Shown: positions 2,937 to 29,449 of the stretch, one piece after another | How positions within the stretch are numbered: position 1 is the first letter of the stretch | How the letters are laid out: each line of letters starts with the position of its first letter | IMG/VR virus record: IMGVR_UViG_3300017917_001996 | Location: 124,001 to 188,000 of that record | DNA: 64,000 nucleotides | Strand: one strand, 5' to 3' | Made by a program: the position numbers and the translations under genes | Notes under the pieces: model-generated | Told to the model about the DNA's origin: nothing | Databases searched by the model: none | Seen by the model: only the letters and a program-made list of their open reading frames with translations

Positions 2937-3572
2937 ATGGCTTATTTAAAAGAAAATTTAACTTTCGACCGTGCTCAGCTAGAAGTCCTCTATGAGGACA
3001 AAGCTGGCACTGGTACCAAAGAGTGCTACATGAAGGGCATCTTTATCGAAGGTGGAGTTCGCAACTTAAACGAACGTGTTTATCCAGTTAGCGAAATTAC
3101 CAAGGCCGTTTCTGCAATTAACGAACAACTAAAAGAAGGTTATAGCGTTTTAGGCGAAGTTGACCATCCAGATGATCTAAAAATTAATTTAGATCGTGTT
3201 TCACATATGATTCAACAAATGTGGATGGATGGTCCTTGCGGCCACGGTAAACTAAAGATTCTACCAACACCAATGGGACAACTTGTACAAGCTATGCTAA
3301 CAAGTGGTGTTAAGTTAGGTGTTTCAAGCCGCGGTAGCGGCAATGTCGATGATGCCACTGGGCACGTCAGTGACTTCGAGATTGTTACAGTTGATATCGT
3401 AGCACAGCCAAGTGCTCCACATGCATATCCAACGGCCATTTACGAAGGGCTGATGAATATGCGCCACGGACACCGTGTGCTCGAGGATGTACGTGACATT
3501 CAAGACGATAAAAAAGTGCAAAAGTATCTAAAAGAGCAGGTAACTCGCTTGATTAGAGACTTAAAATTATAA
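2937..3572 (+). CDS. gp21: Prohead core protease (gp21)
   Basis: Catalytic motifs GEVDHP, GVSSRGSG and DIVAQPSAP, plus NxNxRVYP. Confidence 0.95.
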   Translation: MAYLKENLTFDRAQLEVLYEDKAGTGTKECYMKGIFIEGGVRNLNERVYPVSEITKAVSAINEQLKEGYSVLGEVDHPDDLKINLDRVSHMIQQMWMDGPCGHGKLKILPTPMGQLVQAMLTSGVKLGVSSRGSGNVDDATGHVSDFEIVTVDIVAQPSAPHAYPTAIYEGLMNMRHGHRVLEDVRDIQDDKKVQKYLKEQVTRLIRDLKL

Positions 3573-4708: not shown

Positions 4709-5893
4709 ATGACACAAGAACTATTAGAAAGCCGTTGGGGCGAGACTAAAGATGCCCTGCTAGAAGGCCTACAAGGTAGCCGTCGCACTTCGATGAGCGT
4801 TATCCTTGAAAACACACGCAAGCACTTAACTGAAAGTGCTTCTGCTGGCGCTACTGCTGCTGGTAACGTTGCAACACTTAACCGTGTTATTCTTCCAGTT
4901 ATCCGCCGTGTAATGCCTACAGTTATTGCTAACGAAATCGTTGGTGTTCAGCCAATGACAGGACCTGTTGCACAGATCCACACTCTACGTGTTCGTTATG
5001 CAGAATCTGCAAACAGCTCTGGCGCAGCAGGTTTTGACACCGACGTTCTAGCTGGTGACGAAGCTCTAAGCCCATTCAAGATCGCTACAGCATACTCTGG
5101 TAGCCTAGCTACTGGTCGTGCTGATTCTACAGCCGCTCTAGAAGGCGTACCAGGTCGTAAGATCAACGTCCAGATTCTAAAGCAAGTTGTAGAAGCTAAG
5201 ACTCGTAAGTTAAGCGCTCGCTGGACTTTCGAAGCTGCTCAAGATGCACAAGCTATGCACGGTCTTGATGTTGAAGCAGAAATCATGGCTGCTCTAGCAC
5301 AAGAAATCACAGTAGAAATCGACCAAGAAGTTCTTGGTTCTCTACGTGCTCTAGCTGCTTCCGAGTTCACATACAACCAAGCCGCTGTATCTGGTACAGC
5401 TACTTTCGTTGGTGACGAGCACGCCGCTCTTGCAGTTCTAATCAACCGTTCCGCTAACCTAATTGCACAGCGTACACGTCGCGGTGCTGGTAACTGGGCA
5501 GTTGTTTCTCCAGCTGCATTGACTGTTCTACAGAGTGCAACAACTTCTGCTTTCGCTCGTACAACAGAAGGTACATTCGAAGCACCTACAAACACCAAGT
5601 TTGTTGGTACTCTAAACGGCGCAATGAAGATCTACGTTGACAGCTATGCTAGCGACAGCACTCCTGTTCTAGTTGGCTATAAGGGTTCTTCCGAGGCTGA
5701 TGCAGCAGCATTCTACTGCCCATACGTTCCTCTAATGAGCTCTGGCGTTGTTCTAGATCCAGCTACTTTCGAACCAGTAGTTGGCTTCATGACACGTTAT
5801 GGTTACGTAGAACTAACCAACACAGCTTCTTCTCTAGGTAACGCAGGTGACTACGTTTCTGAGATCGCTGTTTCTAACTTGTCTTTCAGCTAA
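4709..5893 (+). CDS. gp23: Major capsid protein (gp23)
   Basis: gp23 motifs GVQPMTGP, VEAKTRKLSARWT.E.AQD..A.HG.D.E.E, EIDQE, FYCPYVPL and TFEPVVGFMTRYG. Confidence 0.97.
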   Translation: MTQELLESRWGETKDALLEGLQGSRRTSMSVILENTRKHLTESASAGATAAGNVATLNRVILPVIRRVMPTVIANEIVGVQPMTGPVAQIHTLRVRYAESANSSGAAGFDTDVLAGDEALSPFKIATAYSGSLATGRADSTAALEGVPGRKINVQILKQVVEAKTRKLSARWTFEAAQDAQAMHGLDVEAEIMAALAQEITVEIDQEVLGSLRALAASEFTYNQAAVSGTATFVGDEHAALAVLINRSANLIAQRTRRGAGNWAVVSPAALTVLQSATTSAFARTTEGTFEAPTNTKFVGTLNGAMKIYVDSYASDSTPVLVGYKGSSEADAAAFYCPYVPLMSSGVVLDPATFEPVVGFMTRYGYVELTNTASSLGNAGDYVSEIAVSNLSFS

Positions 5894-5917: not shown

Positions 5918-5946
5918 AAAAGGCCCTCCGGGGCCTTTTTGTTTTT
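5918..5946 (+). terminator. Rho-independent terminator after gp23
   Basis: AAAAGGCCC-TCC-GGGCCTTTT hairpin followed by TTGTTTTT. Confidence 0.85.
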
Positions 5947-5947
5947 C

Positions 5948-5955
5948 TATAAATA
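5948..5955 (+). promoter_or_regulatory. Consensus T4 late promoter TATAAATA
   Basis: Perfect match directly after the terminator, 4 nt before ATG 5960. Confidence 0.75.
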
Positions 5956-5959
5956 TAAT

Positions 5960-6667
5960 ATGGTAGAATTAATTTATACATTGATTGTAACGCACATTAC
6001 AATCGTATGTGTTACCCTTTATCTACATAGAGGGCAGGCACATAGAGCAATTGTATTCCATCCTATACTAGAACATTTTATGCGATTCTGGCTTTGGCTA
6101 ACCACAGGCATGGTAACCAAGGAATGGGTAGCAGTACACAGGGCACATCATAGATTCTGTGAAGAAAACAAAGATCCGCACAGCCCACATGTTTATGGAA
6201 TTTTCAAGGTGCTATTCCAAGGCGCAATGCTATACTATACTGCATCAAAGGATCGCAACATGGTAGAACAATTTGGGGTAGGAACACCCGACGATTGGCT
6301 AGAAAATAAATTATATACACCACACAGTCGTCTAGGAATTTTAATTATGTTATTAATTAATATTCTTTTATTTGGGTCTATAGGATTATTAGTATGGGGC
6401 ATACAAATGATTTGGATTCCATTTCATGCTGCAGGGATAGTCAATGGATTAGGTCATTGGTGGGGTTATAGGAACACCAATACAAAAGATAAAAGCAGAA
6501 ATTTAATACCACTGGCAGTTTGGATTGGCGGTGAAGAATTACACAATAACCATCATGCTGATCCAGGAAATCCTAAACTAAGCCGTCGATGGTTTGAGTT
6601 TGATATCGGTTGGATGTGGCTAACTGTTTTCAGAGCATTCGGGTTAGCAAAAATCAAAAACTCATAA
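5960..6667 (+). CDS. desA: Membrane fatty-acid (delta-9 acyl-CoA-type) desaturase, auxiliary metabolic gene
   Basis: Three His boxes HRGQAH, HRAHH and HNNHH; FWLWLTTGM and GHWWGYRN motifs; hydrophobic segments. Start moved from TTG 5939 (inside the terminator) to ATG 5960. Confidence 0.9.
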   Translation: MVELIYTLIVTHITIVCVTLYLHRGQAHRAIVFHPILEHFMRFWLWLTTGMVTKEWVAVHRAHHRFCEENKDPHSPHVYGIFKVLFQGAMLYYTASKDRNMVEQFGVGTPDDWLENKLYTPHSRLGILIMLLINILLFGSIGLLVWGIQMIWIPFHAAGIVNGLGHWWGYRNTNTKDKSRNLIPLAVWIGGEELHNNHHADPGNPKLSRRWFEFDIGWMWLTVFRAFGLAKIKNS

Positions 6668-6670
6668 ATA
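6663..6670 (+). promoter_or_regulatory. Late promoter box (CATAAATA)
   Basis: TAAATA overlapping the desaturase stop codon. Confidence 0.65.
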
Positions 6671-6674
6671 TATT

Positions 6675-6726
6675 GTTCGCTCGAAAGAGAGTTTATGCGG
6701 TCCCCGCCGCGTAGGCCTAGAACGCT
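6675..6726 (+). ncRNA. Candidate structured cis-regulatory 5'-leader RNA
   Basis: CTC-GAAA-GAG hairpin, GTTTATGCGG/CCGCGTAGGC stem and GTTC/GAAC pairing, located between the promoter and SD TAAGGAG. Confidence 0.55.
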
Positions 6727-6743
6727 ATTTTAAGGAGAAACAA

Positions 6744-7412
6744 ATGGGACGTCCAGTTAATAAGAGATATTTTGGATCAGGTGCAGGTAATCAGATCAAG
6801 GTTCGTGCTAAAATTGGAAGCAATGCTGAAGGTGACGGTTTTATCGTTGCACAAAAAGGTTCTAATAGATTCAAAGTTACAGTAGGTGCAAACACAGGCA
6901 TCTGCACATTAGTTAACAAGAACACTGGTAGCTTGTCTGCCAACGAAATGATCATCAACGTTGCAACAGATGCTAGTACTTGGCAACAAGTTACTAGATT
7001 GTACAATCGCACAGCGCAAGTAGAAGGTGGCCAAAAAGTTACTTGGAACTTTGCTACTAGCACATCTGATGGTGCAGTACAAGTTGCTGATGTTGAAGGC
7101 TCTAATGCTAAGACTATTACAATTAACACACAACCATCTAGTACAACAGCTAACGTAACAGCTAATGCTAACGTAACAGTGACATTTACTGTTGTTGCTA
7201 GCGGTGTAGGCGATTTGGCTTACCAGTGGCAGAAGCAAGAGTCCGGCGCAGGTGCTTGGGCTTCAATCAATGGTGCAACAGCAAGCTCTTACACAACTCC
7301 AATTTTAACAATTGGTGCTGATAATACAGATGCATATCGTGTTGTTGTTTCGTCTACAAGCGGCGCAGCACAGTCTGTTACTTCTAACGTAGCAGTACTA
7401 ACAGTTGTTTAA
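6744..7412 (+). CDS. Virion protein with C-terminal Ig-like domain (Hoc-like decoration candidate)
   Basis: C-terminal ITINTQP..VTFTVVA..LAYQWQK..INGAT.SSYT..YRVVV Ig pattern; own promoter, strong SD and terminator. Confidence 0.7.
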   Translation: MGRPVNKRYFGSGAGNQIKVRAKIGSNAEGDGFIVAQKGSNRFKVTVGANTGICTLVNKNTGSLSANEMIINVATDASTWQQVTRLYNRTAQVEGGQKVTWNFATSTSDGAVQVADVEGSNAKTITINTQPSSTTANVTANANVTVTFTVVASGVGDLAYQWQKQESGAGAWASINGATASSYTTPILTIGADNTDAYRVVVSSTSGAAQSVTSNVAVLTVV

Positions 7413-7427
7413 TTTTTGACAACTAAC

Positions 7428-7457
7428 AAAAATAGCACCTCCGGGTGCTATTTTTTT
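7428..7457 (+). terminator. Rho-independent terminator
   Basis: AAAAATAGCACC-TCCG-GGTGCTATTTTT (cUNCGg loop) followed by a U-tract. Confidence 0.9.
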
Positions 7458-7459
7458 AT

Positions 7460-7467
7460 GATAAATA
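7460..7467 (+). promoter_or_regulatory. Late promoter box (GATAAATA)
   Basis: Intergenic TAAATA directly after the terminator. Confidence 0.65.
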
Positions 7468-9444: not shown

Positions 9445-9858
9445 ATGGGAAGATATCTAAAAAATAGAGAGATACCTACTGCTAGTTATAGTGTTCGTAT
9501 TCCTATGGGTACTAATGCACTGGGGCCCGATGCTCCGGTTACGGGATTAATACGTTTTAACGAAACTGAAGACAATCCTCAGATTTATTTAAAAAATGCT
9601 TGGCGTAATTTTTTAGTTTCTTTAGAAACAATGATTTATCCATCCAAGGACACATTTTTTGGTGATGGTAATACAACAGACTTTGGCCCTATGCAGTACG
9701 GTTACCTGCAAGGTAATGAAATTATGATATTGGTGTTTATAGGTAACGTTTTTCAAAATCCTGGCGTAGCCTATATTGTATCGGATACGACAATTAGTTT
9801 TACTAGTCCACCACCTGATGGGCATCCAATTGTAATCTTACATGGATTTGCGAGATAA
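9445..9858 (+). CDS. Small virion structural protein
   Basis: GLIRFN motif and a F.GDG.T..F / GNVFQ.P..AY / ISFTSPP domain that recurs in ORFs 33282 and 41973. Confidence 0.6.
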   Translation: MGRYLKNREIPTASYSVRIPMGTNALGPDAPVTGLIRFNETEDNPQIYLKNAWRNFLVSLETMIYPSKDTFFGDGNTTDFGPMQYGYLQGNEIMILVFIGNVFQNPGVAYIVSDTTISFTSPPPDGHPIVILHGFAR

Positions 9859-10710: not shown

Positions 10711-10718
10711 GATAAATA
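10711..10718 (+). promoter_or_regulatory. Late promoter box (GATAAATA)
   Basis: Intergenic TAAATA; SD TAAGGAG before ATG 10769. Confidence 0.65.
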
Positions 10719-24901: not shown

Positions 24902-27900
24902 ATGACGATACGTTACCTACGTCAGCCGCCGGTATTAAACAACCTAAGTAAATCGTCGAATGTAAGTTCGACAGTACTAGGAACGCCCCTACGAATTACC
25001 AATGCTGCTGCTAGTACGTCGTTTACAACTGGTGCATTGATTGTCACCGGTGGCGTAGGTATTTCGGGTAACTTAAACGTTGCTAACGTAAGAGCCAATA
25101 CTGTTAGCGGAACTATTACCACTGCAAATCAACCCAATATTACTAATATTGGTGTGCAGCAAAATTTTACAGCAGTTAATGTAACTATTACTGGTAACCT
25201 AGTTTTAGCTGGTAACCTTTCTACTGTTAGTTCTGAAAATTTATCTGTTTCGGATTCTCTATTAGAAATCCACACCAGTGGAACAGCATTAACTGTTGAC
25301 GACGGCAGAGACTTAGGTCTTGCTATTCATTACTATAAAACTGGTGACCAAACTGCGTTTTTAGTCTGGGACAATGCCACTGGCAGTTTGAAGTATTACG
25401 CCGATGGTTCAGCTAGCGTTAGTGGTGTTGTATCCGGTACACTGGGTACAATTAACGCTGGCGAATTTATTGCGTCGAATATTACACCTTCGACTAGTAC
25501 ATTAACTGGTGCTTTACAAGTAGCTGGTGGTGCTGGTATTCAAGGTAATGTTTTTGCTGGTGCAGTATATACAAACAATTTATATTACGCCAATGGTAGT
25601 CCGTACAGTTCTTCCATGGGTGCAACTGGTGCCCAGGGTCCGATTGGTGCAACTGGTGCCCAAGGTGCTACAGGCGCTGGCTACACAGGAAGTCGAGGTG
25701 ACACTGGTTTAACTGGTGCAACTGGACCAATTGGTGCAACTGGTTTTGGTGTTCCAGGACAAGCAGGTTACACGGGTAGCCAAGGTATACCAGGTATAGC
25801 TGGTGTACAAGGTGCAACTGGCGCAAGCGGTATAGCAGGACCTGTAGGCGGCCTTGGCGCTACAGGTGCAACTGGACCAGCTGGCGCACCAGGAACTATT
25901 GGCCAGACAGGTTATACTGGTAGTGCAGGCTCAGCAGGCTCAGCAGGCGCACAAGGTGCAACTGGTGCAAGCGGCATAGCAGGACCAGCTGGTAGTACTG
26001 GACCTACTGGTTACACAGGTAGTCGGGGCATTGCCGGAACAGCAGGTACAGCCGGCGCAACTGGTGCCACGGGACCAGCCGGTTTACCTGGCGCAGCAGG
26101 TATTGATGGTGCAACAGGTGCAACAGGCTCTGTGGGACCTGCAGGTCCTGCGGGCGAAACTGGTGCTACGGGCTTACCTGGATTACCTGGCGCAGCAGGC
26201 CTAGACGGAGCAACCGGTGCCACAGGTATTGCTGGACCTGCAGGTCCTATAGGAGAAACGGGTGCAACTGGTCCAATTGGATTACCTGGTACAGCAGGTA
26301 TTGATGGTGCTACTGGCGCTACGGGTATAGCAGGTCCCGTTGGACCAGCAGGCGAAACGGGTGCAACAGGACCGGCTGGTTTATCTGGCGCAGCAGGCCT
26401 AGACGGAGCAACCGGTGCCACAGGTATTGCAGGTCCAGCCGGTCCTGTTGGTGAAACAGGTGCAACTGGTCCAATTGGATTACCTGGTACAGCAGGTATT
26501 GATGGTGCTACTGGTGCTACGGGTATTGCCGGTCCAGTGGGTCCGTTAGGTTCAACAGGTGCTACGGGTTTAACTGGTGCTACTGGTACACCTGGCAATG
26601 TTGGTTACACAGGTAGCCAAGGTTTAGCGGGTACAGCAGGACGTGATGGGGAAGCCGGTGCAACTGGTCCAATTGGATTACCTGGCGCAGCGGGCCGCGA
26701 TGGTTCTACAGGTGCAACTGGTATAGCTGGTCCAGTAGGTCCTGCAGGTCTAACAGGAGCAACAGGCCCTGCAGGTTTACAAGGTACAGCAGGTATTGAT
26801 GGTGCTACTGGTGCTACGGGTATTGCCGGTCCCGTTGGACCAGCAGGCGAAACGGGCGCAACTGGTCCAATTGGATTACCAGGCGCAGCAGGTATTGATG
26901 GTGCCACCGGTGCTACAGGTATTGCCGGTCCAGTGGGTCAAGATGGCGCAACAGGAGCAACAGGACCCGCAGGACAAATAGGTTTGTCAGGGCAAGATGG
27001 TGCTACTGGTGCTACGGGCATTGCTGGACCAGTTGGCCCTGCAGGTGAAACAGGTGCAACAGGACCTGCAGGATTACAAGGTGTAGCAGGAACAGACGGT
27101 GCTACCGGTGCCACAGGTATTGCAGGTCCAGTAGGTCCTGCAGGTGAAACAGGTGCAACTGGTCCAATTGGATTACCTGGTACAGCAGGCCGCGATGGAG
27201 CAACAGGTGCCACAGGTATTGCTGGACCAGTAGGTCAAGACGGTGCTACTGGTGCTACTGGTCCTGCTGGACAAATTGGCTTACCAGGTCAAGACGGTGC
27301 TACTGGTGCTACAGGTATTGCAGGTCCAGTTGGTCCTATAGGAGAAACAGGTGCAACTGGTCCAATTGGTTTACCTGGCGCAGCGGGCCGCGATGGTTCT
27401 ACAGGTGCAACTGGTATAGCTGGTCCGGTTGGCCAAGACGGTGCTACTGGTGCAACTGGTCCAATTGGTTTAACAGGTTCTCCTGGTATAGATGGAGCAA
27501 CAGGTGCCACAGGTATTGCAGGTCCAGTAGGTCCAATTGGTTTAACTGGTTCTACAGGACCTCAGGGCCCAGCGGGCGTTAATGGAAGAGATGGCGCCAC
27601 GGGTGCTACAGGTATTGCAGGTCCAGTGGGGCAAGACGGTGCTACAGGTGCAACTGGTCCTGCTGGACAGATTGGTTTAACAGGTAGAGATGGTTCCACT
27701 GGTGCAACTGGTGTTGCTGGACCAGTTGGTCCTATAGGAGAAACAGGTGCCACTGGCCCGATTGGTCAAACAGGTCTTCCGGGCAGGGATGGTTCCACTG
27801 GTGCAACTGGCCCAGTGGGCCCAGTAGGACAAAATGGAGCCACTGGTGCAACCGGTCCAATTGGTCAAACGGGTCTTCCGGGTCGTGATGGCTCAACGGG

Positions 27901-29449
27901 TGCAACTGGCCCAGTGGGCCCAGTGGGTCAGAGCGGTGCTACAGGTGCCACTGGCCCTATAGGTTTACCTGGTATAGCAGGTATTGATGGTGCTACTGGT
28001 GCTACGGGTATAGCAGGTCCAGTAGGTCCTATTGGTCCAGCTGGTGCAACAGGCTTGATAGGAGCTACAGGTCTACAAGGTGATCTAGGTTACACTGGTA
28101 GTCAAGGTATTCCAGGATCACCAGGTGGCGCAACTGGCCCAATTGGTTTTACAGGTAGTTCGGGCAGTACTGGCCCAATTGGTTTTACAGGTAGTCGAGG
28201 ACTATCTGGATTTGTTGGATCGTCGGGCGATTTTGGAGCAACTGGTTTAACTGGTTATACAGGTAGTCAAGGTTTACCAGGCGCAGCAGCAGATAAAGGT
28301 TTCACTGGTAGTCAAGGTGAAGTAGGTTTTACTGGTAGTTCGGGTATAAACGGGTATACAGGTAGTCAGGGTATACCTGGTGCTTATGCAGCAATTGGTT
28401 ATACTGGTAGCCAAGGAGACCTAGGTTATACTGGAAGTCAGGGTATCCCTGGCGAGTTTGCAGCATTAGGTTATACTGGATCTAAGGGTGACACAGCTAC
28501 TAACTTTACTGGCCCTCAAGATATCGGAGTCATTGGTGGCAATAGTTATACACTAGCGACATTTGATGCTGGTAATTTACTAAAATTAGACAGTACACAA
28601 GAGTTTACCTTAACAATTCCAACAAACGACCAAGAGCCATTTTTAATTGGACAGCGTGTTGATATTCAACAAGCAAACATTGGTTCTATAAACATAGTTA
28701 CAAGTACTGGCGTTACACTGCAATCAGTTGGAATTTCAGGATTAGTTACACGATATTCTGTTGGTACACTGTTTAAGGTTGATTTTAACGAATGGTTGTT
28801 TGTTGGACCAGAATCAACAGGTTACACAGGTAGCCGGGGAGATTTAGGTTACACAGGTAGCCGGGGCGAAAAAGGTGATACAGGGTTAACAGGGTATACA
28901 GGTAGTCAAGGTATACCTGGTGCTTATGCAGCAATTGGTTATACGGGCAGTATAGGTTATACTGGATCCGTTGGTGAACAAGGGCTCAGAGGATATGTAG
29001 GAAGCTCTGCAACTATAGCAGTAGGATTACTTGATTCTAATAACCAACTTGGTAATGTTGTAACACAAATAAACACTATCCAATTTGATCAAGAATCTGG
29101 TTTTAGCGTAACTGATTTAGGTTCAGGTGCAGTAAGAATTTCGGGCGGAGCAGGTGGCACAACTGGCAATGTTTCGTCATTCAGATTCTGGGAAGTCGAT
29201 GGGCAAAATACGCTGGTTGCCAGCGGTTCTGACACTGTTAAATTTGTTGCCGGTAGCGGTATTACTATAGAAACAGATGATTCAACAAACCCAAAAACTA
29301 TAATCTTTTCTGCTCCTAGATTTACTGTTAATTTGGATGCAAATGGTGTTAATAGACCTTACGGGTTAGATGCTTATTATGATGGCGGATATCCGGACAG
29401 CGTTTACGGAGGCATTGTTCCGCTTGATGCAGGCGGTATTGACTTTTGA
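24902..29449 (+). CDS. Very long collagen-like fibre protein
   Basis: About 950 residues of Gly-X-Y repeats flanked by fibre-shaft domains; ends LDAGGIDF. Confidence 0.9.
25619..28495 (+). repeat. Collagen Gly-X-Y array with 99-nt unit and 198-nt higher-order period
   Basis: Unit [33 protein letters not shown] (33 aa); identical DNA stretches at 26191/26389 and 26281/26479. Confidence 0.9.

What the first reader, a model, noticed from the sequence alone, without database searches (positions are those of the whole stretch)
6675..6726. Compact structured RNA fills the 5' leader of the Ig-domain gene
A GC-rich island starts at the predicted late TSS and ends just before the SD. Visible pairings are CTC-GAAA-GAG (GNRA loop, 6680-6689), GTTTATGCGG/CCGCGTAGGC (6691-6700 with 6707-6716, 10 bp, 3 G-U) and GTTC/GAAC (6675-6678 with 6720-6723), forming a three-way junction. 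Alternatively GGC-CTAGAAC-GCT (6714-6726) forms a hairpin whose loop GAAC pairs with the 5' GTTC as a pseudoknot. G-U pairs and the GNRA loop point to RNA-level structure. There is no U-tract, so it is not a terminator, and I do not recognise a known family. Candidate translational operator controlling decoration-protein stoichiometry, or a riboswitch-like element.
Basis: partly seen in the sequence, partly recalled or inferred. Interest (0 to 1): 0.7.

Follow-up and report, generated by a model that had tools for sequence, protein, structure and literature searches.

The report
Known phage leader RNA (freshwater-2)
The structured RNA in front of the Ig-domain gene is real and conserved, but it is a slightly divergent copy of the already catalogued "freshwater-2" RNA motif (Rfam RF02980). 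Here it turns out to be the late-mRNA leader of the capsid-decoration-like gene that follows the major capsid gene in a large group of aquatic T4-like phages.

Summary
Rfam's default thresholds report nothing. An E-value search matches RF02980 "freshwater-2" over its full length at window 6676-6746 (45.1 bits; gathering score 49.9; E about 3e-6). Relatives score 52-72 bits.

More than 110 non-identical homologous leaders from viral contigs share one architecture:
- a T4-type late promoter;
- a variable hairpin P1;
- a conserved hairpin P2 (UAUGCNG/CNGCGUA, with a fixed U·G pair);
- hairpin P3, a 3-6 bp covarying stem with a 7-nt loop NUAGAAC;
- a strong Shine-Dalgarno (SD) sequence and AUG-GGN-CGN-CC (MGRP).

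Covariation is decisive: 97% of cells are paired and the score is 0.52, against 0.10 for shuffles.

The GTTC/GAAC closing helix, the three-way junction, the GNRA loop and the lowest 3 bp of the "10-bp" stem are not family features.

The motif occurs about once per genome. In 81 of 81 loci where the major capsid gene is visible, it lies downstream of gp23.

Its function is untested. The fixed nucleotides suggest a translational operator or enhancer recognised by a specific factor. It is a new member of a known kind, of modest interest.

The parts
6663..6670 (+). T4-type late-promoter-like octamer CATAAATA (7 of 8 matches to TATAAATA). It overlaps the desaturase stop codon TAA at 6665-6667. The predicted transcript start is about 6676-6678.
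   Evidence: ATAAATA occurs 10 times in the window, always on the + strand, against 23 expected on both strands. TAAATA precedes the motif in 89 of 114 homologous leaders. The start position is inferred from T4 late promoters (my own knowledge), not measured.
6676..6692 (+).
   Evidence: In the family, 69 of 70 non-redundant spacers of at least 19 nt fold into a hairpin, with mean z = -2.4. The sequence is not conserved, and P1 is absent in 16 leaders.
6694..6713 (+). P2, UAUGCGG (6694-6700) paired with CCGCGUA (6707-6713). It has a fixed U6696·G6711 wobble and the loop UCCCCG (6701-6706).
   Evidence: Compensatory changes at two pairs and 99% of cells paired. The lower five pairs are almost invariant in sequence.
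6714..6726 (+). P3, GGC (6714-6716) paired with GCU (6724-6726), with the 7-nt loop CUAGAAC (6717-6723).
   Evidence: 39 distinct stems, almost all of 3-6 bp, surround the loop NUAGAAC. All 4 model pairs show double changes. One close ortholog has CCAGAAC.
6727..6746 (+). Linker AUUUU, strong SD AAGGAG (6732-6737), a 6-nt spacer and AUG (6744-6746). This stretch is part of the Rfam model (positions 56-84).
   Evidence: It is the strongest SD among the neighbouring genes.
6744..7412 (+). Downstream gene of 222 aa with N-terminus MGRPVNKRYFG. The predicted fold is two Ig-like beta-sandwich domains, a candidate capsid decoration protein.
   Evidence: Model pLDDT 91. The best multi-domain PDB matches are chains in the phage Moo19 and N4 capsid reconstructions. 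PHROG 'head protein' at E = 3e-11. The Pfam I-set match is weak. The PA5oct homolog is a virion protein confirmed by mass spectrometry.
4709..5893 (+). Major capsid protein gp23. It is the conserved upstream anchor of the motif.
   Evidence: Pfam Gp23 at E = 8e-98. The synteny holds in 81 of 81 loci.
5918..5939 (.). Intrinsic terminator-like palindrome after the capsid gene.
5939..6667 (+). Fatty-acid desaturase-like gene inserted between the capsid gene and the leader. The likely start is ATG 5960.
   Evidence: Pfam FA_desaturase at E = 1.6e-11. Relatives have 0 to 4.4 kb of varied insert at this position.

Best explanation
The element is a copy of the freshwater-2 RNA motif (Rfam RF02980), scoring slightly below the family's threshold.

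In this phage lineage it is the 5' untranslated leader of a late mRNA. A T4-type late promoter (6663-6670) starts transcription a few bases before P1. The RNA then folds into three tandem hairpins (P1, P2, P3) that end 5 nt before a very strong SD. The gene it leads encodes a tandem-Ig, decoration-like virion protein with the N-terminus MGRP, and this gene always sits downstream of the major capsid gene.

Most likely mechanism (inferred, roughly 45% likely): the leader is a translational operator or enhancer recognised by a specific factor.
- The near-invariant lower P2 stem (UAUGC/GCGUA, with a fixed U·G wobble) and the P3 loop UAGAAC would be the recognition surface. The partner could be a protein (phage or host) or the ribosome.
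- Binding next to the SD would set how much of this accessory capsid protein is made.
- The variable P1 at the extreme 5' end would additionally protect the mRNA.

What is shown: the identity of the element, the fold, the covariation, the genomic context and the promoter-like signal. What is inferred: the transcript start, the partner and the direction of regulation.
For: Family identity:
- The match to RF02980 is full-length, at 45.1 bits and E about 3e-6.
- Relatives with the same architecture score 52-72 bits.

Fold:
- P2 and P3 have 97.2% of cells paired, against 74.8% for shuffles.
- The covariation score is 0.52, against 0.10 for shuffles and at most 0.08 for slid registers.
- P3 has 39 distinct stems.
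- P1 hairpins are present in 69 of 70 spacers.

RNA rather than DNA or coding:
- The fixed U·G pair would be an A·C mismatch on the other strand.
- The P2 AUG falls equally in all three frames relative to the main AUG.
- MGRP is conserved with synonymous CGU/AGA codons, so that conservation is at the protein level.

Gene specificity:
- About 126 of 127 hits to a pattern covering only P2-P3 precede MG(A)R genes.
- There is one copy per 130-330 kb phage record.
- The motif lies downstream of gp23 in 81 of 81 loci.

Promoter.

Transcription: freshwater metatranscriptome contigs cover 6674-6861 but not the flanks.

Specific recognition: fixed stem and loop bases lie beside freely covarying pairs.
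Against: - The score is below Rfam's gathering threshold.
- No experiment or 5'-end mapping exists, and the metatranscriptome data are contigs from relatives that could include DNA.
- No binding partner is identified.
- The encoded protein has Ig-like folds and no known RNA-binding fold.
- Homologs in PA5oct, Phosso and a 455-kb phage keep the MGRP N-terminus without the RNA. The protein motif therefore does not need the RNA.
- The P3-to-SD distance varies from about 2 to about 25 nt, which argues against simple steric occlusion at a fixed distance.
Confidence: 0.85

Rival explanations
1. The leader is a constitutive 5'-UTR module with no trans-acting regulator. In this reading it acts as a 5'-terminal stabiliser against 5'-end-dependent decay and as a structural insulator. 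It keeps the strong SD unpaired so that a high-copy capsid accessory protein is translated efficiently.
For: - P1 begins about 5-9 nt after the promoter-like TAAATA, so it lies at or near the 5' end.
- The gene has the strongest SD in the neighbourhood.
- The SD is not consistently sequestered, with mean unpaired probability 0.6.
- No partner is known.
Against: A stabiliser or insulator needs structure, not sequence. Here five P2 base pairs (including a U·G), the P3 loop and two P2-loop cytosines are nearly invariant across leaders whose other pairs covary freely. P1, the part best placed to stabilise the mRNA, is dispensable in 16 leaders.
Confidence: 0.3
2. The leader is an autogenous operator. 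Unassembled MGRP decoration protein would bind its own leader through its basic N-terminal arm (MGRPxNKRxFG) and repress translation. This would couple synthesis to capsid assembly.
For: - The RNA and the MGRP N-terminus are strictly linked.
- Precedents from my own knowledge are autogenous control by T4 gp32 and gp43 and by the P22 scaffolding protein.
- The N-terminal arm is basic and extended in the model.
Against: - The MGRP arm is conserved in phages that lack the RNA, so it has another role, probably capsid anchoring.
- The fold is Ig-like, not RNA-binding.
- Linkage of a leader to its own gene is expected in any case.
Confidence: 0.12
3. The leader is a riboswitch that senses a small molecule and controls translation.
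For: It has conserved loop and stem nucleotides and a 5'-UTR location. Rfam files the family as cis-regulatory.
Against: - The fold is three tandem hairpins with 0-2 nt linkers and no multi-helix junction.
- There is no conserved alternative pairing that hides the SD.
- The regulated gene is a structural capsid protein with no metabolic link.
- P1 is optional.
Confidence: 0.07
4. The element works at the DNA level, as a recombination or insertion hot-spot boundary or a protein-binding site, rather than as RNA.
For: Between the capsid gene and the leader there are variable inserts of 0 to 4.4 kb, here a desaturase. The gene after the leader is hypervariable beyond its N-terminal domain.
Against: Compensatory changes, a fixed U·G that is only a pair on the sense strand, and G·U pairs in P3 all point to a transcribed strand. 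The element sits between the promoter and the SD.
Confidence: 0.03

Closest known systems
freshwater-2 RNA motif (Rfam RF02980; from the 224-motif screen of Weinberg et al. 2017, PMC5737381)
   Same: All model elements are present in order and full-length: P1, UUAUGC...GCGUA (P2), a short stem with loop CUAGAAC (P3), AAGGAGAAA and AUG. The source is a freshwater or pond metagenome. The downstream gene family is the same as for members scoring above threshold.
   Different: It scores 45.1 bits, below the 49.9-bit gathering score. The reasons are a 3-bp P3 with a G·U pair, a mismatch in P1 and a short P3-SD linker.

The paper's main text does not mention the motif, and its supplement is not held here. 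As I recall, the family had no assigned organism or function. The phage context described here (T4-like phage, late promoter, gene downstream of gp23) is my own finding.
Translational operators of phage T4 (gene 32 leader pseudoknot, gene 43 hairpin operator, RegA sites)
   Same: Each is a structured or specific RNA site next to the ribosome-binding site of a phage mRNA and is recognised by a protein to set protein dosage. This describes how the element might work, from my own knowledge.
   Different: There is no sequence or structure similarity. Those operators control early or middle replication genes, not a late capsid gene. No binding protein is known here.
5'-terminal stem-loop mRNA stabilisers (for example the ompA 5' UTR)
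   Same: A hairpin lies at or near the 5' end of a highly expressed mRNA (P1).
   Different: Stabilisers are not conserved in sequence. P2 and P3 carry invariant bases, and P1 is optional.
HK022 put / lambda nut antitermination RNAs
   Same: These are hairpins placed just after a promoter in a phage transcript. P1 of the window's closest relatives reads CGCUCUUAA, which resembles lambda boxA as I remember it.
   Different: The boxA-like string is confined to one sublineage, lies inside a stem and is absent from the window (CGCUCGAAA). The motif is tied to the SD and AUG of a single gene, which is followed at once by a terminator-like palindrome and a new late promoter.

Membership tests
freshwater-2 RNA (RF02980) | Covariance-model score at or above the gathering threshold (49.9 bits) | tested here: not met
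   The score is 45.1 bits, with E = 2.7e-6 to 3.9e-6, covering model positions 1-84 of 84. Nothing is reported at gathering thresholds. Fourteen copies in relatives score 52.6-72.4 bits.
freshwater-2 RNA (RF02980) | P2, a 7-bp hairpin UAUGCNG/CNGCGUA preceded by U | tested here: met
   6694-6700 pairs with 6707-6713 and matches the consensus exactly. The family shows compensatory changes.
freshwater-2 RNA (RF02980) | P3, a short stem directly after P2 with the 7-nt loop cUAGAAC | tested here: met
   6714-6726, GGC-CUAGAAC-GCU, has 3 bp where the model has 4.
freshwater-2 RNA (RF02980) | A variable 5' hairpin P1 ending 1-2 nt before UUAUG | tested here: met
   6676/6679-6692, with an ambiguous register.
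freshwater-2 RNA (RF02980) | A conserved AAGGAGAAA SD and an AUG downstream, leading an MGRP gene | tested here: met
   SD at 6732-6740, AUG at 6744, protein MGRPVNKRYFG. About 126 of 127 pattern hits share this gene family.
Intrinsic (Rho-independent) terminator | A G+C-rich hairpin followed by a U-tract | tested here: not met
   The terminator scan does not list it. P3 is followed by AUUUUAAGGAG, and the element lies after a promoter-like site.
Known riboswitch or ribozyme classes (Rfam 15) | A match to any such covariance model | tested here: not met
   Only RF02980, plus one chance-level miRNA hit at E = 8.8.
T4-type late promoter | A TATAAATA octamer upstream of a late gene, on the coding strand | tested here: inconclusive
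   CATAAATA at 6663-6670. All 10 ATAAATA sites in the window are on the + strand and the word is otherwise depleted. TAAATA is present in 89 of 114 homologous leaders. I did not search for gp55 or gp33, and no 5'-end data exist.

The most novel reading that the evidence does not exclude
freshwater-2 may be an assembly-coupled translational operator specific to tailed-phage capsid accessory genes. A late phage protein would bind the invariant P2 stem and P3 loop and throttle translation. The protein could be the unassembled MGRP decoration protein, acting through its basic N-terminal arm. In some sublineages, including this one (GUUC 6675-6678 with GAAC 6720-6723), a pseudoknot between the 5' end and the P3 loop would contribute.
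Probability: 0.12. Interest if true: 0.6.

Novelty: new member of a known kind. Interest (0 to 1): 0.33.

Why it matters
As a structure, the element is not new. It belongs to an orphan Rfam motif that had been seen only in aquatic metagenomes.

This analysis adds a biological context for that orphan motif:
- It belongs to T4-like, often jumbo, aquatic phages.
- It sits behind a late promoter.
- It occurs about once per genome.
- It always leads the hypervariable tandem-Ig "MGRP" virion gene downstream of the major capsid gene.

This makes its function testable with reporter fusions and binding assays using late phage proteins. It also gives annotators a compact marker for this capsid-module boundary, which is a hot spot for inserted genes such as the desaturase here.

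Tried and rejected
- **Rfam at gathering thresholds:** no hit. E-value mode was needed.
- **tRNA/tmRNA scan:** none found.
- **blastn of the locus against isolated phages:** no match.
- **Repeats or paralogs in the 250-kb record:** a single copy only.
I tested complementarity of the 5' spacers to the P3 loop against all 120 permutations of the loop.
  - The mean longest match was unremarkable (rank 30 of 120).
  - A match of at least 4 bp occurred in 28% of spacers, against 12% for permutations.
  - The matches are concentrated in a few sublineages and in leaders without P1.
  - The result is inconclusive and the helix is not a family feature.
- **SD sequestration or an expression platform:** no consistent pairing.
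- **uORF from the invariant P2 AUG:** rejected. The frames are spread evenly and lengths range from 2 codons to open.
- **RNA-level constraint on the MGRP codons:** rejected, because synonymous codons vary.
- **Phage-encoded ribosomal protein S21 as a partner:** none found in the record.
- **Literature:** full-text searches found nothing on freshwater-2. The 2017 paper's main text does not name it and its supplement is not held.
- **Metatranscriptome contigs:** these give presence only and no 5' ends.
- **Scan of cellular genomes:** 66 pattern hits, of which only 7 have the full architecture. All 7 are on MAG contigs, which are probably mis-binned phage DNA.
- **DNA for the closest ortholog (P0002):** not available.
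- **Complex prediction:** not used, because jobs that include RNA return no verdict.

Full report
**1. What is in the sequence**

The window is positions 124001-188000 of a 250-kb IMG/VR virus record. The phage is T4-like:
- ORF 4709-5893 is a gp23 major capsid protein (Pfam E = 8e-98).
- It is preceded by a scaffold-like gene. It is followed by a terminator-like palindrome at 5918-5939, a fatty-acid desaturase-like ORF ending at 6667, the element, and a 222-aa ORF at 6744-7412 that begins MGRPVNKRYFG.

The island 6675-6726 is 60% G+C, against 37% in the flanks. With flanks the z-score is only -1.3. Folding energy therefore does not settle the question.

**2. It matches a known family**

At Rfam's gathering thresholds the 64-kb window gives no hit. 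In E-value mode, 6676-6746 matches RF02980 "freshwater-2" over all 84 model positions. The score is 45.1 bits against a gathering score of 49.9, with E about 3e-6.

The model's structure is three tandem hairpins followed by a conserved SD and AUG. In the window they map as follows:

| Element | Window coordinates | Details |
|---|---|---|
| P1 | about 6676-6692 | register ambiguous |
| P2 | 6694-6700 with 6707-6713 | |
| P3 | 6714-6716 with 6724-6726 | loop CUAGAAC |
| SD | 6732-6737 | AAGGAG |
| AUG | 6744 | |

The score falls short for three reasons: P3 has 3 bp including a G·U pair, P1 has a mismatch, and the linker is short.

**3. Comparative evidence**

Homologs of the downstream protein in viral contigs carry the same leader.

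A second pattern restricted to P2-P3, with no constraint on what follows, also hit the limit. About 126 of its 127 hits precede a gene starting MGRP, or rarely MGN or MAR.

Evidence for each hairpin from 114 non-identical leaders:
- **P2.** It occurs as UAUGCGG/CCGCGUA (57 leaders), UAUGCUG/CAGCGUA (23), UAUGCAG/CUGCGUA (17) and UAUGGGG/CCCCGUA (10).
- **P3.** It has 39 distinct stems, almost all of 3-6 bp, around the loop NUAGAAC.
- **P2 and P3 on a 43-sequence alignment.** 97.2% of cells are paired, against 74.8% for shuffles. The covariation score is 0.52, against 0.10 for shuffles and at most 0.08 for slid registers.
- **P1.** It is conserved only as structure. 69 of 70 spacers of at least 19 nt form a hairpin (mean z = -2.4), and it is missing in 16 leaders with short spacers.

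The evidence that the conserved structure is RNA is twofold. The invariant third pair of P2 is U·G, which is a pair only on the sense strand. The conserved AUG inside P2 is not a uORF, because its frame relative to the main AUG is evenly distributed and the ORF lengths are erratic.

Conservation of MGRP itself is at the protein level: the Arg codon is CGU in 60 leaders and AGA in 40, and the Pro codon is CCA in 67, CCU in 33 and CCG in 11.

**4.

- The lower three pairs of the "10-bp" stem (6691-6693 with 6714-6716) compete with P1 and P3 and are not supported.
- The GNRA loop is one of three possible P1 registers, and P1 loops are not conserved. Close orthologs have GUUAA, AUUA and UUA.
- The GTTC/GAAC helix would have to be a pseudoknot into the P3 loop.
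  - GUUC is retained in the window's sublineage.
  - Some leaders without P1 carry UCUAG or UUCUA, which can also pair with the loop.
  - Family-wide, only 28% have at least 4 bp of complementarity, against 12% for loop permutations. The mean match is unremarkable.
  - I call this inconclusive for the sublineage and not a family feature.

**5. Context (new here, as far as I can tell)**

- **Copy number.** The motif is a one-per-genome element. There is a single copy in this record and in records of 318, 328, 175 and 135 kb, and none in a complete 455-kb relative. Occasionally there are two copies before tandem MGRP genes (L103, L023).
- **Position.** In all 81 loci where gp23 is visible, the leader and its gene lie downstream on the same strand, 128 nt to 4.4 kb away (median 473 nt). 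The desaturase here is one of many inserts at this spot.
- **Promoter.**
  - A terminator followed by (N)TAAATA typically precedes the motif.
  - In the window, ATAAATA occurs 10 times, always on the + strand and next to gene starts. It is otherwise depleted, with 23 occurrences expected.
  - The octamer at 6663-6670 is therefore plausibly a T4-type late promoter. That would place P1 within a few bases of the 5' end, which I infer from T4 and have not measured.
- **Transcription.** Freshwater metatranscriptome contigs from relatives cover 6674-6861 lightly and the capsid gene heavily, and they skip the non-conserved flanks. This is consistent with transcription but is not proof.
- **Cellular genomes.** A scan found only 7 full copies, all on MAG contigs.

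**6. The gene**

The 222-aa protein models confidently (pLDDT 91) as two beta-sandwich domains with an extended N-terminal arm.

Its best multi-domain PDB matches are chains in the capsid reconstructions of phages Moo19 and N4; the remaining matches are generic Ig domains. PHROGs gives "head protein".

N-terminal homologs in Pseudomonas phage PA5oct (a virion protein confirmed by mass spectrometry) and in Sinorhizobium phage Phosso also start MGRP and sit behind TAAATA. Their leaders are short and unstructured.

The protein is therefore probably a capsid decoration or accessory protein. Its N-terminal motif does not depend on the RNA.

**7. Mechanism**

The pattern of conservation is five P2 pairs with a U·G, the P3 loop and two P2-loop cytosines held fixed while neighbouring pairs covary freely. 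This argues for specific recognition by a protein, the ribosome or a tertiary contact, not merely for a stabilising hairpin.

The SD is the strongest in the neighbourhood and is not consistently sequestered. The hairpins are joined by 0-2 nt with no junction. A riboswitch is therefore unlikely.

My estimates for the mechanism, which together come to about 1:

| Mechanism | Probability |
|---|---|
| Translational operator or enhancer recognised by a specific factor, with P1 as an optional 5' protector.
| Constitutive stabiliser or insulator | about 0.3 |
| Riboswitch | under 0.1 |
| DNA-level element | about 0.03 |
| No listed mechanism | about 0.15 |

None of these can be decided with sequence alone.

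**8. Novelty and score**

The copy is sub-threshold, so standard annotation would miss it, which makes it a new member of a known kind.

The family's function is still unknown. Placing the family in phage biology is useful but incremental, so interest is about 0.33.

Noticed in passing
window 5939-6667 (promoter-like TATAAATA at 5948-5955, ATG at 5960): A fatty-acid desaturase-like gene sits between the capsid gene and the leader. Its only plausible ATG lies 4 nt after a perfect TATAAATA. The mRNA would therefore be leaderless or nearly so, or else made by read-through of the capsid-gene terminator.
   Followed up: partly
L073:13720-13854 (-): A related phage contig that carries freshwater-2 also carries a Polynucleobacter-1 RNA (RF01718, 85 bits). 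This second orphan aquatic RNA motif may also be phage-borne, or may hint at the host.
   Followed up: no
L103:466-537 and 1647-1721; L023:1454-1486 and 3173-3205: Some relatives have two freshwater-2 copies, each in front of one of two tandem paralogous genes (MGRP, and one MGNALKIRK). The leader therefore duplicates together with the gene.
   Followed up: partly
L184, L186, L188, L197, L206, L213, L214 (genome contigs): Seven MAG contigs filed as cellular carry complete freshwater-2 plus MGR(P/A) genes. They are labelled Rhizobium, Crocinitomicaceae, Vampirovibrionales, Haliscomenobacter (two contigs, 183 and 148 kb), Legionellales and Rickettsiales. They are probably phage DNA binned into MAGs.
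   Followed up: no
window 7428-7467 and 10712-10718: The unit of terminator-like palindrome plus (G)ATAAATA repeats after the MGRP gene (7428-7455, then 7460-7467). ATAAATA recurs at 10712. All 10 ATAAATA sites in the window are on the + strand. This suggests a chain of separately promoted late genes.
   Followed up: partly
window 9445-9858: A neighbouring structural gene also starts MGR (MGRYLKNREIP). It has no freshwater-2 leader and its start abuts the previous gene's stop.
   Followed up: no
L065, L073, L093, L125, L126 (P1 region): In the window's sublineage, P1 reads CGCUCUUAA, which resembles lambda/rrn boxA as I remember it. The window itself has CGCUCGAAA. This is probably coincidence.
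   Followed up: no
window 26001-28000: There is a sharp G+C peak here (0.57, against about 0.40 elsewhere) with strong positive GC skew.
   Followed up: no
L224:1220-1232: A close ortholog (77% protein identity) has the P3 loop CCAGAAC instead of CUAGAAC. The loop U is therefore not strictly invariant. My search patterns had forced UAGAAC.
   Followed up: partly
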